Positions 11,467 to 19,548 of a stretch of 32,923 bases of DNA are shown here, in pieces. How positions within the stretch are numbered: position 1 is the stretch's first letter; each line of letters opens with the position of its first letter. A program made the translations under genes and the position numbers. Under the pieces are notes generated by a model, which was not told the DNA's origin, did not search any database, and worked only from the letters and a program-made list of their open reading frames with translations. The DNA is from Macrostomum lignano (lineage: Eukaryota): contig NIVC01004864.1 in the NCBI GenBank assembly GCA_002269645.1, positions 1 through 32,923 on the forward strand, given 5' to 3'.

Positions 11467-11809
11467 CCCGCTGGGACCCAACTCCGATTTTCAACTGTAA
11501 ACTAACTGACTCAAAGAAGAGGAAAATCAAGCCGATTTTCATCCGATTTTCATCTTGTTGGAACGTCAATGTCGTCGGCTCGATTTTAGGCAGATGAAAG
11601 TATAAAAAAACGGATGAAATTCGGACTAACATTCATCTTCGTTCGATTCTCACCGGTTTTTGTCGGACCGAAAGAGAAAAGTCGGTCCGACAAAATCGAC
11701 GACTCATCGATTTCTCTAAGAAAACGTAACAACTACTCCGACATTCACCAGATATAAGTCCGACTTTCAGCGGTGTGTAAACCTGCATAAATATGACGAT
11801 GTTATTCAC

Positions 11810-12222
11810 TCCGATTTTCACCGATTTTCATCTGCACAAGTCGGACTAACTGCTACGCGACTTTCACCAGATATTGAAGATCCGATTTTCACCGATTTTC
11901 ATCTGCACAAGTCGGACTAACTGCTACGCGACTTTCACCAGATATTGAAGATCCGATTTTCACCGATTTTCATCTGCACAAGTCGGACTAACTGCTACGC
12001 GACTTTCACCAGATATTGAAGATCCGATTTTCACCGATTTTCATCTGCACAAGTCGGACTAACTGCTACGCGACTTTCACCAGATATTGAAGATCCGATT
12101 TTCACCGATTTTCATCTGCACAAGTCGGACTAACTGCTACGCGACTTTCACCAGATATTGAAGATCCGATTTTCACCGATTTTCATCTGCACAAGTCAGA
12201 CTAACTGCTACGCGACTTTCAC
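11810..12222. repeat. 71-bp subterminal tandem repeat of the transposon left end, about 5.8 copies
   Basis: Period 71 (CCGATTTTCACCGATTTTCATC at 11882 and 11953). Confidence 0.93.
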
Positions 12223-12598
12223 CCGACAATGATGGCTCGAATTAATGGAACAATGTTGGTCTCAATATATATTCACCAAAGTAAGAAACTAACAGTGTTT
12301 GACTCAAGATTTTGCGGTTTGTAATTATAAAATTAAATGTTGTAGCAAGTTTTAAAATATAATTAAAGTTGACAGCTTAATTACTATATTATTTTTTACA
12401 AAAGTACCATTAGTTTGAAAAATTATATTGGCGTTTACCTTTTAGTTTGTTAAAAATTATTCGTTTGTATAAACTTTAGAAAAAATGCTGAAGTATGTTT
12501 AAAGTTTAATATGAATAATATGCATATGATATGGAAGTACGATAAAGTAGATAAAATTGTTATAAAACAGTTTTAAGTGACTTCCACCCTCTCCCAGA

Positions 12599-13870
12599 TC
12601 AGGCAGGACCAGATTTTTCGGCCTTGTCCGCCGTTTTGTCGGCCTCGTCCGCCGTTTTGTCGGCCTTGTTTGCAGGCTTGGTCGCTTTCGCTTCACGTTT
12701 CTCTAACGGGTGTCCCGCCCTCTTCTTTGCCTGGTTAATGGCGTCGACGCATGCCGCGTAGGCCCGCTGAATTTCGGCGCGAGACACTTTGACACCGTTA
12801 TTATCCAGATGCTGGATAATGACGTCAATTCTGGTGCGGTCCGCCGCCACTCGCGTGTTCTCCCCGGAGCTACGGCCGGTAAATGATGTGTCTTCTAGCT
12901 CTATTTTTTCAAAAAGAGCGCGAATACAAAATCGGAGCAGGCTCCCGCGAAGTTTCGACAACTTGTCAACGTCTTCGCAGCGCTTCAACTGCTCAATTTG
13001 TGTTAGGATTGACGCACGATCCATAGCTCGCACCTGTGTGTATTGTGATCATCCGAAAGGTGGGGCATAATAAGTCTGTACATTGTAACTTGTATATTGT
13101 CTGTGAAACAATATTAGATTTCGGATAATAATAATAACGACGGAATCTAATGATTTATGCGTCATTACCTTCTGGGTCGGAAATTCCTCAGAGAGTGGAA
13201 CGTAAATGCGATCACAGCCGGACTTCGACCGGCCAGCGGATTTTAGCTGACATGTAACGTTTAGCGGCGCAACACTTTCAGAGGTACAATCCTCGTCGTC
13301 CTCGTCGTCGGCATCGGCCGCAGAAGTGATTGCGGCAGCGACTGATAAAAGAGCGCGTCGCCTGACCTGCGCGGCATAAACCATGGCTTCAGTTAACTGC
13401 TCCTGCAGCCGCGAGGTAGATTCGCGAAGAGCTGCTACTTCATTAGCCCTGTTGTCCAGCAGTTTTAAGAGCTCAACACGCTCCTGACGGAGGGCCATTA
13501 GTTCAGTTTTCCAAGTTTTCTGTTGCTCGTCCTTTCTGGAGCATTCAGGGCAGCTATCGACATTTGTTGGCAGCGATGTCGTGGGTGGAGGATCTGCCTC
13601 TGATTCCACACTGTGGCAGAGTTTCAGAAATTTCCTGCCCTGCTCCATAGAAGCAAACGGGCCCTTGATAATTGTGGCCGGATGCCGAGCAGCACTTTGT
13701 TTATTTCTCTTGGCCAAAACAACTTCCACCTGTTGGCCAACAGTGCGGACGTAGCCGTCGTCCAAGTCGACACCCTCGTCTAAAACGTCGACGTCATTAA
13801 CGAGGGCGCACTGCTTCTTGCCCAGTTTAAACTGTACCAACCAAATAATCTCAGCTGCTTTGGGCGGCAT
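12599..13870 (-). CDS. Transposon gene 3: N-terminal globular domain, coiled coil and BEN-like domain, about 378 aa; exons 13870-13169 and 13033-12599
   Basis: ATG at 13870. A phase-0 intron 13168-13034 (AAG|GTAATG...ACACACAG|GTG) joins the two track ORFs in frame. The C-terminal region LLRFCIRALFEKIELEDTSFTG...ADRTRIDVIIQHL...IQRAYAACVDAINQAKKR matches the BEN helical pattern by eye. Confidence 0.65.
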
Positions 13871-18622: not shown

Positions 18623-19177
18623 GCGTCGAACACAGCTGCGGGAGGGATTTACAACTCAAATTATTGCTTCAGCAATGAGAACAAAGTTAACTAAAGTAAT
18701 TAAAGAAATAAAGCTGCTAAGAAATTATCCGAAAATCAATGAGATGTCTGATCTGACTATTGATAGATATGACCCGACATATGATAGACACGAACTAAAT
18801 TTTGATATACAATGCTGCTTAAACCCTAAATATATGGACAGGAAAAACAGGATACAGGAAAATGGACACTAAGAGTGAAAATAAAGCACTAAACATAAAC
18901 ACAGTGATTGCAGATTCACACTGCATTTCAATAGTTTTAGACATCAGTATATTTGATATGGACACAATTTAATGTCAATTTTAATGTAGGCATGTACTAG
19001 TGTATAATATTACATAAGGCATGTAATACAAAGAGCCACCGGCAATGTAGACTGGCATAATTAAGCGGGTGGTGGAAGAGCCAGATCAAGCGACAGGGGA
19101 TGGATGACTATGACACTCTTCAATCAGCAGACGGCGCCCAGACGCAGCGCCGCAGCATCTTATAGCACTTTATCCAA

Positions 19178-19383
19178 GTAAGGTGAAAAATGGGTAAATG
19201 TCGGTGAAAAATCGTGCCAAAACTCCACGGAACTTAAGCCGACTTTTCTCCGACAAAATGTAGGTGAAAATCGGGTAAACGTCGGTGAAAAATCGTGCCA
19301 AAACTGCACCGAACTTAAGCCGACTTTTCTTCGACAAAATGTAGGTGAAAATCGGGTAAATGTCTGTGAAAAATCGTGCCAAA
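19178..19383. repeat. 81-bp subterminal repeat of the transposon right end, about 2.5 copies
   Basis: TAGGTGAAAATCGGG at 19261 and 19342. It contains TGAAAATCGG, the reverse complement of the left-end motif. Confidence 0.88.
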
Positions 19384-19548
19384 ACAATTCAGACTTTAGT
19401 CTGCTTTTATCGGCCTGAAAAACGAGCGAAAGTCGGGAAGAAATCGTGTATATTTCAGTCCGATAATCGAATCGTATAAAAATCGTGTGAAAATCGGGTT
19501 GATAATGATCAGACAGTTTGCAAGATGTCGGAGTTGGGTCCCAGCGGG

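What the first reader, a model, noticed from the sequence alone, without database searches (positions are those of the whole stretch)
11467..19548. Complete three-gene CMC/EnSpm-like transposon: transposase, OB-fold protein and BEN protein
Seen: perfect 21-bp TIRs, an AC TSD, inverted subterminal repeats, and three separately spliced minus-strand genes in tandem, each with its own ATG, stop and phase-consistent introns. Known: plant CACTA elements encode TnpD plus the subterminal-repeat-binding TnpA, and BEN domains occur in animal transposons and viruses. Inference: this element uses a three-component machine (DDE transposase, sequence-specific DNA binder, ssDNA- or helicase-interacting OB-fold). 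I do not recall that combination being described.
Basis: partly seen in the sequence, partly recalled or inferred. Interest (0 to 1): 0.82.

Follow-up and report, generated by a model that had tools for sequence, protein, structure and literature searches.

The report
Flatworm CACTA-type transposon with BEN-like partner gene
This is a real, recently inserted cut-and-paste DNA transposon of the flatworm Macrostomum lignano from the known CACTA/Mirage/Chapaev superfamily; its conserved core is two genes (transposase plus a probable BEN-type DNA-binding partner), the proposed "OB-fold" third gene is a family-specific passenger, and this copy's transposase gene is broken by a one-base deletion.

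Summary
The structure is real. There are perfect 21-bp TIRs, a true 2-bp TSD, inverted subterminal CCGATTTTC repeats and three minus-strand genes with four in-phase GT-AG introns. The element is not "complete". The transposase ORF has a 1-nt deletion in a C-run (16916-16918) that removes the H(4)H motif and the catalytic E.

The host is Macrostomum lignano. A second 97-99% identical copy has the same TIRs and a TA TSD.

The transposase has no direct Pfam hit. It is strongly homologous to Transposase_21/DUF1258 proteins and keeps the CMC signature D, D, C(2)C, H(4)H, E. CCC termini and a 2-bp TSD match the animal "TRC" group first described as SmTRC1 in Schistosoma.

Gene 3 (new N-terminal domain, CxxC, coiled coil, BEN-like C-terminus) follows the transposase in all five clade members examined. 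It is the likely TnpA analogue.

Gene 2 is found only in this family. Four related elements lack it, and one of them carries an F-box/LRR gene in that slot. Nothing supports an OB-fold.

Verdict: a two-component CMC transposon with variable cargo, not a three-component machine. It is a new variant of a known kind, of modest interest.

The parts
11467..19548 (-). Whole transposon copy (8,082 bp); genes run on the minus strand
   Evidence: TIRs, empty-site reconstruction, second copy with the same ends at L002 3480-12150
11465..11466 (.). Target-site duplication, left copy (AC)
19549..19550 (.). Target-site duplication, right copy (AC)
11467..11487 (+). Terminal inverted repeat at the 3' end relative to the genes, CCCGCTGGGACCCAACTCCGA
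19528..19548 (-). Terminal inverted repeat at the 5' end relative to the genes
11484..12223 (+). Subterminal repeat field: 15 CCGATTTTC motifs, 12 of them within the 71-bp tandem array at 11810-12223 (5.8 units, two per unit)
   Evidence: (D1, D5)
19181..19506 (-). Subterminal repeat field in inverted orientation (GAAAATCG motifs), including the 81-bp array at 19181-19385
   Evidence: (D6, I2, I4-I16)
15850..18622 (-). Gene 1, DDE transposase. Exons 18622-17216, 17134-16672 and 16585-15850; introns 17215-17135 (81 nt) and 16671-16586 (86 nt). About 868 aa once the frame is corrected. Start ATG at 18622, or 18607 as in the other copy.
16916..16918 (-). Frameshift site: a CCC run where the paralogous copy has CCCC. 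A 1-nt deletion truncates the ORF before H(4)H and the catalytic E.
18245..18524 (-). 81-bp (27-aa) tandem repeats in the transposase N-terminal region; copy number differs between copies
14272..15242 (-). Gene 2, 294 aa, family-specific and of unknown function. Exons 15242-14823 and 14736-14272; intron 14822-14737. It has a 140-aa N-terminal domain, six 14-aa acidic repeats (42-bp array 14392-14652) and a Cys-containing tail.
12599..13870 (-). Gene 3, 378 aa. Exons 13870-13169 and 13033-12599; intron 13168-13034. It has a conserved N-terminal domain (aa ~8-85), CxxC (aa 107-110), a coiled coil (aa ~108-188) and a BEN-like domain (aa ~220-340).

Best explanation
The feature is a young copy of an autonomous-type class II (cut-and-paste) transposon of Macrostomum lignano. 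It belongs to the CACTA/Mirage/Chapaev (CMC) superfamily, in the animal 'CCC-terminus, 2-bp TSD' group typified by SmTRC1. Shown here: the TIRs, the 2-bp TSD, the subterminal repeats, the gene models, the superfamily homology and catalytic signature, a second copy in the genome, and conservation of gene 3 next to the transposase in five divergent elements. Inferred: the DDE transposase (N-terminal CxxC..CxxC finger, D303/D389/E665) cuts at the CCCG termini and integrates with a 2-bp stagger. The gene 3 protein plays the role that TnpA plays in En/Spm. Its BEN-like domain would bind the family-specific subterminal repeats (CCGATTTTC here), and its coiled coil would dimerise to pair the two ends and/or regulate the element's transcription. 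Gene 2 is a lineage-specific passenger in a variable slot between the two core genes and is not a conserved part of the machinery. This copy cannot make active transposase as sequenced, because of the 1-nt deletion. It would have to be mobilised in trans, unless the deletion is a homopolymer assembly error.
For: Structure. Host and second copy with a TA TSD. Transposase: P0001 is 40% identical over 99% of the query. phmmer gave 4,254 relatives; 29 of the top 40 hit Transposase_21, 18 DUF1258, 5 Plavaka and 3 DUF4218. Direct BLAST of the window protein gave E=2e-39 to P0017 and 2e-35 to P0015, and both carry Transposase_21. All invariant D, D, C(2)C, H(4)H and E positions are retained; the signature definition is from PMC12730594. 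Gene 3 homologues with the same architecture lie directly downstream of the transposase in L001, L003, L004 and L005. A profile search of the loci confirmed this, though each of the six top rows contains one of the sequences the profile was built from, or a 96%-identical copy, so their E-values (1e-36 to 1e-48) are circular. BEN: source label; consensus to Pfam BEN, sole hit, E=2.3e-4. Each family has its own subterminal motif: window CCGATTTTC, L001 CCGGTTTT-type, L004 GTCGGCACTG. Gene 2 is absent from the relatives. L004 has F-box/LRR ORFs in the middle slot. Frameshift.
Against: The window's transposase clade has no direct Pfam hit, even with its consensus sequence. No single gene 3 protein reaches the Pfam BEN threshold. 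PDB sequence and profile searches and Foldseek on a low-confidence model did not recover BEN structures. No binding of gene 3 protein to the subterminal repeats has been shown. L001 and L004 do not show intact 2-bp TSDs. Gene 2 shows 7 synonymous to 7 non-synonymous differences between the two copies, a weak hint of constraint, so it may have a function. Only five clade members could be examined.
Confidence: 0.75

Rival explanations
1. One reading: a three-component transposition machine in which the gene 2 protein is an OB-fold ssDNA- or helicase-interacting factor required together with the transposase and the BEN protein.
For: Gene 2 is a clean spliced ORF with its own ATG and stop. It is present in both sequenced copies. 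Its 7:7 synonymous to non-synonymous differences are slightly fewer non-synonymous changes than neutral expectation.
Against: Gene 2 has no homologue in L001, L003, L004 or L005. L003 has only about 170 bp between the transposase and gene 3. In a 5.8-billion-protein database the only hits are M. lignano copies of the same element. There is no Pfam or PDB match, the AF2 pLDDT is 40, and no OB hit came from Foldseek.
Confidence: 0.07
2. The gene 3 protein is mainly a transcriptional regulator or repressor of the element (or of host genes) that uses a BEN-type DNA-binding domain. It is not a structural cofactor of the transpososome.
For: Cellular BEN proteins are sequence-specific transcriptional regulators (reviewed in PMC11601247, PMC8887127). 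Maize TnpA itself both regulates the promoter and assists transposition (summarised in PMC1636069). Gene 3 is annotated as an expressed spliced gene in M. lignano, with an alternative acceptor seen in P0004.
Against: Gene 3 co-occurs strictly with the transposase across families that are 35-40% identical. Family-specific inverted subterminal repeats fit an end-binding role. The two roles are not mutually exclusive.
Confidence: 0.2
3. Gene 2 is not a functional gene. It would be a captured host fragment or a fortuitous ORF built around a 42-bp tandem repeat, wrongly read as a gene.
For: It has no homologues anywhere outside the element. A third of the protein is a six-fold 14-aa repeat encoded by a 99%-identical 42-bp array. 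The same slot holds an unrelated F-box/LRR gene in another family. In L002 it is interrupted by a nested insertion.
Against: It has a canonical in-phase 86-nt intron of the same size class as the transposase introns. A database model, P0005, carries the spliced junction RPR|VVVDHEEQ. The 7:7 synonymous to non-synonymous count is also against it.
Confidence: 0.3

Closest known systems
SmTRC1 and other animal 'TRC' elements (Schistosoma mansoni, Tribolium, Aedes; DeMarco et al. 2006, PMC1636069)
   Same: Flatworm host. The transposase belongs to the CACTA superfamily. The TIRs begin with CCC rather than CACTA. The TSD is 2 bp. There are tandem repeats near one end. A second protein is encoded downstream of the transposase.
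   Different: SmTRC1 is about 4.7 kb with 54-bp TIRs, and its transposase hits Transposase_21 directly. Here the transposase clade gives no direct Pfam hit. The second protein here is a separate gene with a BEN-like domain; the SmTRC-PrA proteins had no recognised domain and their homology to gene 3 was not tested. There is also an extra middle gene.
Maize En/Spm (CACTA) TnpD/TnpA system
   Same: A DDE transposase works with a second element-encoded protein. Multiple subterminal repeats lie in inverted orientation at both ends. Extra or captured genes are tolerated.
   Different: Termini are CACTA and the TSD is 3 bp. TnpA and TnpD arise from one alternatively spliced unit. TnpA has no detectable similarity to gene 3. 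Here the genes appear to be separate.
CMC/CMCT superfamily as defined by Yuan & Wessler 2011 and Kojima 2025 (PMC12730594)
   Same: [quoted passage not shown] The TSD falls within the 2-5 bp range.
   Different: Most CMCT lineages end in 5'-CA..TG-3'; this one ends in 5'-CCCG..CGGG-3'. Placement as Mirage, Chapaev or EnSpm could not be tested without Repbase references.
PIF/Harbinger (transposase plus a Myb/SANT DNA-binding protein)
   Same: The functional design is the same: two separate genes, a catalytic transposase and a dedicated DNA-binding partner.
   Different: The transposase superfamily is unrelated, the TSD is 3 bp, and the partner has a Myb-like domain rather than a BEN-like one.
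Cellular and viral BEN-domain proteins (Insensitive/Elba, BANP, BEND3, NACC1; polydnavirus BEN genes)
   Same: The C-terminal domain of gene 3 matches the first two thirds of the Pfam BEN profile. It is predicted to be all-helical.
   Different: The score is below the Pfam threshold. The domain is combined with an undescribed N-terminal domain, a CxxC pair and a long coiled coil. It is encoded by a transposon.

Membership tests
CMC (CACTA/Mirage/Chapaev) transposase superfamily | [quoted passage not shown] | tested here: met
   D303, D389, C408-x2-C411, H640-x4-H645 and E665 align with invariant columns of a 40-member alignment
CMC (CACTA/Mirage/Chapaev) transposase superfamily | Significant sequence homology to recognised CMC transposases (Pfam Transposase_21 / tnp2) | tested here: met
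   The link is indirect but strong. BLAST of the window protein gave E=2e-39 to P0017 and 2e-35 to P0015, both with precomputed Transposase_21 hits. 29 of 40 relatives hit PF02992.
CMC (CACTA/Mirage/Chapaev) transposase superfamily | Direct match of the protein itself to Pfam Transposase_21 | tested here: not met
   No Pfam hit at E<=10 for the ORFs, the spliced protein or the clade consensus
CMC (CACTA/Mirage/Chapaev) transposase superfamily | Short TSD (2-5 bp) | tested here: met
   2 bp: AC here, with empty-site reconstruction, and TA in the second copy
CMC (CACTA/Mirage/Chapaev) transposase superfamily | 5'-CA(C)..(G)TG-3' termini | tested here: not met
   Termini are CCCG..CGGG in the window, L001, L002 and L004
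Animal TRC group (SmTRC1-like) | TIR starting with CCC and a 2-bp TSD (PMC1636069) | tested here: met
Animal TRC group (SmTRC1-like) | Closer transposase relationship to SmTRC1 than to other CMC clades; homology of gene 3 to SmTRC-PrA | not tested
BEN domain (PF10523) | Score above the Pfam gathering threshold (23.2 bits) | tested here: inconclusive
   Single members: nothing, or E=0.03. The five-family consensus hits BEN as sole hit at E=2.3e-4 and 21.8 bits, covering profile positions 1-47 of 76. UniProt labels three M. lignano copies as BEN domain-containing.
BEN domain (PF10523) | All-alpha fold superposable on solved BEN structures | tested here: inconclusive
   The AF2 model has four helices at aa 240-339 but pLDDT of only 52-67. 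Foldseek against the PDB gave no hit with E<0.7.
BEN domain (PF10523) | Sequence-specific DNA binding | not testable with these tools
   Needs EMSA, DAP-seq or similar
OB-fold proteins (claimed for gene 2) | Five-stranded beta-barrel, or homology to any OB family | tested here: not met
   No Pfam or PDB sequence hit. The AF2 model has pLDDT 40.6 and the order strand-long helix-two strands-helix-two strands. No OB structure appeared in the Foldseek list. The model is too poor to exclude an OB-fold absolutely.
En/Spm-type two-protein system | Multiple subterminal repeats in inverted orientation at both ends, plus a non-catalytic element-encoded protein | tested here: met
   Binding of the protein to the repeats was not testable.

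The most novel reading that the evidence does not exclude
A deep clade of marine-animal CMC transposons would have, as its obligatory TnpA-like partner, a protein built from an undescribed N-terminal domain, a coiled coil and a BEN-type DNA-binding domain that reads the family-specific subterminal repeats. The clade includes at least three M. lignano families and three metagenomic families. Such elements could be a source, or a vehicle of spread, for the BEN domains now found in animal transcription factors, insulator proteins and large DNA viruses.
Probability: 0.2. Interest if true: 0.6.

Novelty: new variant of a known kind. Interest (0 to 1): 0.38.

Why it matters
The finding gives a concrete, testable case of an animal CACTA-superfamily transposon with a conserved two-gene core. 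The second gene is a probable BEN-type DNA binder. That association did not turn up in the searchable literature. It could bear on where animal and viral BEN domains came from. It also bears on how CMC transposases, which are relatives of Transib/RAG1, recognise their ends.

M. lignano is a transgenesis model, so a recently active endogenous cut-and-paste element with defined ends could have practical value. The comparison also shows that the slot between the two core genes takes up unrelated cargo: gene 2 here and an F-box/LRR gene in another family. This parallels gene capture by plant CACTA elements.

Tried and rejected
(1) I considered a 40-nt GT..AG mini-intron (about 16943-16904) to bridge the frame change. 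I rejected it because the residues it would remove align with P0001. The paralogous copy simply has one more C.

(2) Direct Pfam scans of all ORFs, the spliced transposase and the clade consensus gave nothing.

(3) The AF2 model of the gene 2 N-terminal domain had pLDDT 40.6. The model of full gene 3 had pLDDT 48.9. Foldseek against the PDB gave only noise for both.

(4) PDB sequence and profile searches with gene 2, gene 3, its C-terminal profiles A2 and A5, its N-terminal profile A6 and the L003 BEN-like segment gave no credible hit. The RSV F, DC-SIGNR and BAG5 hits are repeat or coiled-coil artefacts.

(5) Scans of JGI metagenome contigs and IMG/VR with the transposase alignment found no relatives.

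(7) Look-ups of more distant CMC relatives returned 3-kb contigs with no room for neighbouring genes. Whether BEN-like partners occur outside this clade therefore stays open.

(8) Differences between the two copies are too few for a meaningful dN/dS.
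Full report
OBSERVATION

The ends of the claimed element are as described. The 21-bp inverted repeat CCCGCTGGGACCCAACTCCGA lies at 11467-11487 and 19528-19548 and is perfectly complementary (I3). These are the only two matches in the window even with three mismatches allowed. None of 100 shuffles produced a match.

The element interrupts a 53-bp minisatellite that runs from 11038 to 11468 and resumes at 19546 (D3, 8). 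Deleting the element and one copy of the flanking AC restores the array in phase, with 134/140 matches to an ideal array. Keeping both ACs puts the right side out of phase, with 27/72 matches. The 2-bp target-site duplication is therefore real.

CGATTTTC occurs 15 times on the + strand between 11485 and 12184. Twelve of these lie in a 71-bp tandem array. The motif occurs in reverse orientation at 19208-19496, and only once elsewhere in 33 kb.

GENE MODELS

All three genes are on the minus strand.

Gene 1 starts at 18622 and has two introns. The first is 81 nt and in frame (17215-17135, GTAAGA..CAG). The second is 86 nt (16671-16586, GTGAGT..CAG). The stop is at 15852-15850.

Gene 2 runs from the ATG at 15242 to the stop at 14274-14272. 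It has one 86-nt intron at 14822-14737 and encodes 294 aa.

Gene 3 runs from the ATG at 13870 to the stop at 12601-12599. It has one 135-nt intron at 13168-13034 and encodes 378 aa.

The transposase frame, however, changes between ..IIVPEAF and RRNLRSLRELSRFRGHEF.. near 16910. I considered a 40-nt mini-intron and rejected it. The only close homologue in a 5.8-billion-protein database, P0001, aligns without gaps across the junction (..IKVPCSVQRRGARPLKD..). The second genomic copy has CCCC where the window has CCC at 16916-16918, which gives ..IIVPRSVHRRNLRSL...

So the window copy carries a 1-nt deletion. As sequenced, its ORF ends at 16757 without the H(4)H motif and the catalytic glutamate. 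Whether this is a real mutation or a homopolymer assembly error cannot be decided here. 'Complete' is therefore not confirmed.

HOST AND COPIES

Gene 3 is 96% identical to Macrostomum lignano BOX15_Mlig032649g2 (P0002). It is 91-100% identical to two further UniProt entries.

The contig that carries P0002 is GCA_002269645.1 NIVC01000094.1, fetched as locus L002. It holds a second copy of the whole element at L002 3480-12150. That copy is 97-99% identical, has the same 21-bp TIRs and is flanked by TA/TA.

That copy is also defective. Its first ATG is ACG. It has an in-frame TAG in an extra 81-bp N-terminal repeat unit. Gene 2 is split by a 1.15-kb nested TIR element with a 5-bp TSD.

The family is therefore multi-copy and young. 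Two of two copies have a perfect 2-bp TSD of different sequence.

TRANSPOSASE FAMILY

No ORF, the spliced protein or the clade consensus hits any Pfam model.

An exhaustive phmmer search with P0001 against 1.8 billion representatives found 4,254 relatives at E<=0.001, and 72 at E<=1e-30. Of the top 40, 29 match Transposase_21 (tnp2, the CACTA TnpD family), 18 match DUF1258, 5 match Plavaka and 3 match DUF4218.

The window protein itself gives BLAST E=2e-39 to P0017 and 2e-35 to P0015. Both carry precomputed Transposase_21 hits.

All invariant columns of the 40-member alignment are kept in the window protein. These are D303, D389, C408xxC411, H640xxxxH645 and E665, plus an N-terminal CxxC..CxxC at 211-231. 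[quoted passage not shown] Superfamily membership is therefore solid. The clade is nevertheless divergent, at 24-28% identity to Transposase_21-positive proteins.

The termini are CCCG..CGGG, not CAC..GTG. That feature, together with the 2-bp TSD, is what DeMarco et al. reported for SmTRC1 of Schistosoma mansoni and for related elements of Tribolium and Aedes. [quoted passage not shown] Sub-assignment to Mirage, Chapaev or EnSpm needs Repbase references and was not possible.

WHICH GENES ARE CORE

Four further members of the close clade could be read with their flanks. Their transposases are 35-40% identical to the window's.

- L001 is a Tara Oceans contig with a full 9.9-kb element. Its TIR is CCCGCTGAAAAAATCG... 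and it has its own CCGGTTTT-type subterminal repeats.
- L003 and L005 come from a JGI metagenome.
- L004 is a second M. lignano family. The element is 13.85 kb, with TIR CCCGATTGAAAATC and GTCGGCACTG subterminal repeats.

In all four, the ORF downstream of the transposase has the gene 3 architecture. It starts with a small conserved N-terminal domain with invariant W, V, K, GP, L and a CxxC pair. A coiled coil follows, and then a C-terminal domain with the motif ..LlRaLFs.eEL...s.tGR... tblastn first linked these ORFs to gene 3 and to one another. HMMs built from the two domains then recovered all six loci at E=1e-36 to 1e-48, but those HMMs include each family's own sequence, so the E-values are circular.

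The same search found fragments of a further gene 3-like gene on both sides of the L002 copy, on the opposite strand. That copy apparently inserted into another such element.

Gene 2 behaves differently. tblastn and phmmer find it only in the window and L002 copies. The protein database returns only M. lignano fragments of the same element. L003 has about 170 bp between the transposase and gene 3. L004 has F-box-like/LRR ORFs in the middle slot instead (Pfam F-box-like E=4.6e-5).

The conserved unit is therefore transposase plus gene 3. The middle position holds variable cargo.

WHAT THE ACCESSORY PROTEINS ARE

BEN assignment for gene 3:

- UniProt names three M. lignano copies 'BEN domain-containing protein'.
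- Individual sequences are at best sub-threshold in Pfam. Only L003 gives a hit, at E=0.03.
- The HMM consensus of the five divergent C-terminal domains hits BEN (PF10523) as its only Pfam match. The E-value is 2.3e-4 and the score 21.8 bits against a cutoff of 23.2. The match covers profile positions 1-47 of 76.
- AF2 predicts four helices there, but at pLDDT 52-67. Foldseek and PDB sequence searches were uninformative.

I rate the BEN-like assignment as probable, at about 0.75-0.8.

The gene 3 N-terminal domain has no Pfam or PDB relative. It looks like an undescribed domain.

For gene 2 there is no evidence of an OB-fold. There are no family or PDB hits. The AF2 model has pLDDT 40.6 and a non-OB order of secondary-structure elements. 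No OB structure appears among the Foldseek matches.

Between the two copies gene 2 shows 7 synonymous and 7 non-synonymous codon differences. The transposase shows 9:14 and gene 3 shows 5:13. This is a weak hint of constraint on very small numbers.

MECHANISM

Shown: a CMC-type DDE transposase gene, defined ends, a 2-bp TSD, family-specific inverted subterminal repeats and a co-inherited probable DNA-binding protein with a dimerisation module.

Inferred, by analogy with En/Spm TnpD/TnpA as summarised in PMC1636069 and with the established sequence-specific DNA binding of BEN domains (PMC11601247, PMC8887127):

- The transposase cleaves at the CCCG termini and integrates with a 2-bp stagger.
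- The gene 3 protein binds the subterminal repeats through its BEN-like domain.
- It pairs the ends through its coiled coil and/or regulates the element.
- Gene 2 is a passenger of unknown function.
- This copy needs transposase supplied in trans unless the deletion is an assembly artefact.

NOVELTY

The element belongs to a known superfamily and to a known animal type (CCC termini, 2-bp TSD, two proteins). The three-component machine and the OB-fold are not supported.

Two things appear new within the literature I could search. One is that the conserved partner protein is BEN-like and carries an extra undescribed domain. The other is that this pairing defines a clade spanning a flatworm and unidentified marine organisms. 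Searches for BEN domain together with CMC or transposon terms found nothing relevant. Repbase and Dfam could not be consulted, so prior description there is possible.

I class the finding as a new variant of a known kind, with modest interest.

Noticed in passing
window 5802-9299 (+): An uninterrupted 1,165-aa ORF encodes a Slowpoke/BK calcium-activated potassium channel (Ion_trans, BK_channel_a, Slo-like RCK and Slowpoke_C domains, E down to 1.6e-72). It is the upstream host neighbour of the transposon. It is unusual in having no introns across the whole ORF.
   Followed up: partly
window 22229-23119 (-): An ORF with a BSD domain (E=2.2e-17). It is the host gene on the other side of the insertion.
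   Followed up: partly
window, whole (e.g. 4-573, 2279-2816, 4916-5332, 10250-10560, 11038-11468, 20309-22211, 23275-23643, 30741-31433, 32047-32841): The window is very rich in tandem repeats, with 34 TRF rows and periods from 4 to 129 bp. The transposon sits inside one of them, a 53-bp minisatellite.
   Followed up: no
window 18245-18524, 14392-14652, 12614-12669: Each of the three genes contains an in-frame coding tandem repeat, of 81, 42 and 21 bp. Copy number differs between the window and L002/P0002 copies. Repeat expansion therefore seems active inside the element's own genes.
   Followed up: partly
L002 7842-8990: A 1.15-kb non-autonomous element is nested in gene 2 of the second copy. 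It has GAAGTG../..CACTTC ends and a 5-bp TSD (CATTT). The UniProt model P0005, labelled 'AP2/ERF domain-containing', starts inside this insertion, so that label is probably an artefact.
   Followed up: partly
L002 12672-12433 (-) and 2726-1932 (-): Fragments of another, more divergent gene 3-like gene flank the L002 copy on the opposite strand. One is a CxxC plus coiled-coil piece at E about 1e-3, and the other is a BEN-like piece at E=7.7e-8. The element apparently inserted into a related element of a third M. lignano family.
   Followed up: partly
L004 9053-22906: A 13.85-kb M. lignano element of a sister family (transposase P0009) has TIR CCCGATTGAAAATC and GTCGGCACTG subterminal repeats. 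F-box-like/LRR ORFs at 15326-17371 lie between the transposase and its gene 3-like gene. This is likely captured host sequence.
   Followed up: partly
window 15243-15250, 13897-13904, 18638-18644: A pyrimidine-rich ..CAG acceptor-like site lies 1-27 nt upstream of the ATG of each of the three genes. In a species with SL trans-splicing this could mean that the three genes are processed from one precursor. This was not tested.
   Followed up: no
P0004 versus window 13033-12989: The UniProt model P0004 joins ..EEFPTQK directly to LKRCEDVDK.., skipping 15 codons of exon 2. This suggests an alternative 3' splice site in gene 3.
   Followed up: no
L001 850-2170 and 8474: The 3.8-kb region upstream of the transposase in the Tara Oceans element has no long ORF. 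It carries repeated palindromic TGTACATGTA motifs (D12-D17). ACATGT is the motif reported for the NAC1 BEN domain (PMC7764960 abstract, listed). This may be coincidence.
   Followed up: no
L001 95-96 / 10044-10045 and L004 9051-9052 / 22907-22908: These two related elements show no matching 2-bp flanks (AT vs CC; AG vs TC). Possible causes are age, chimeric metagenome assembly of a repeated element, or rearrangement. This was not resolved.
   Followed up: no
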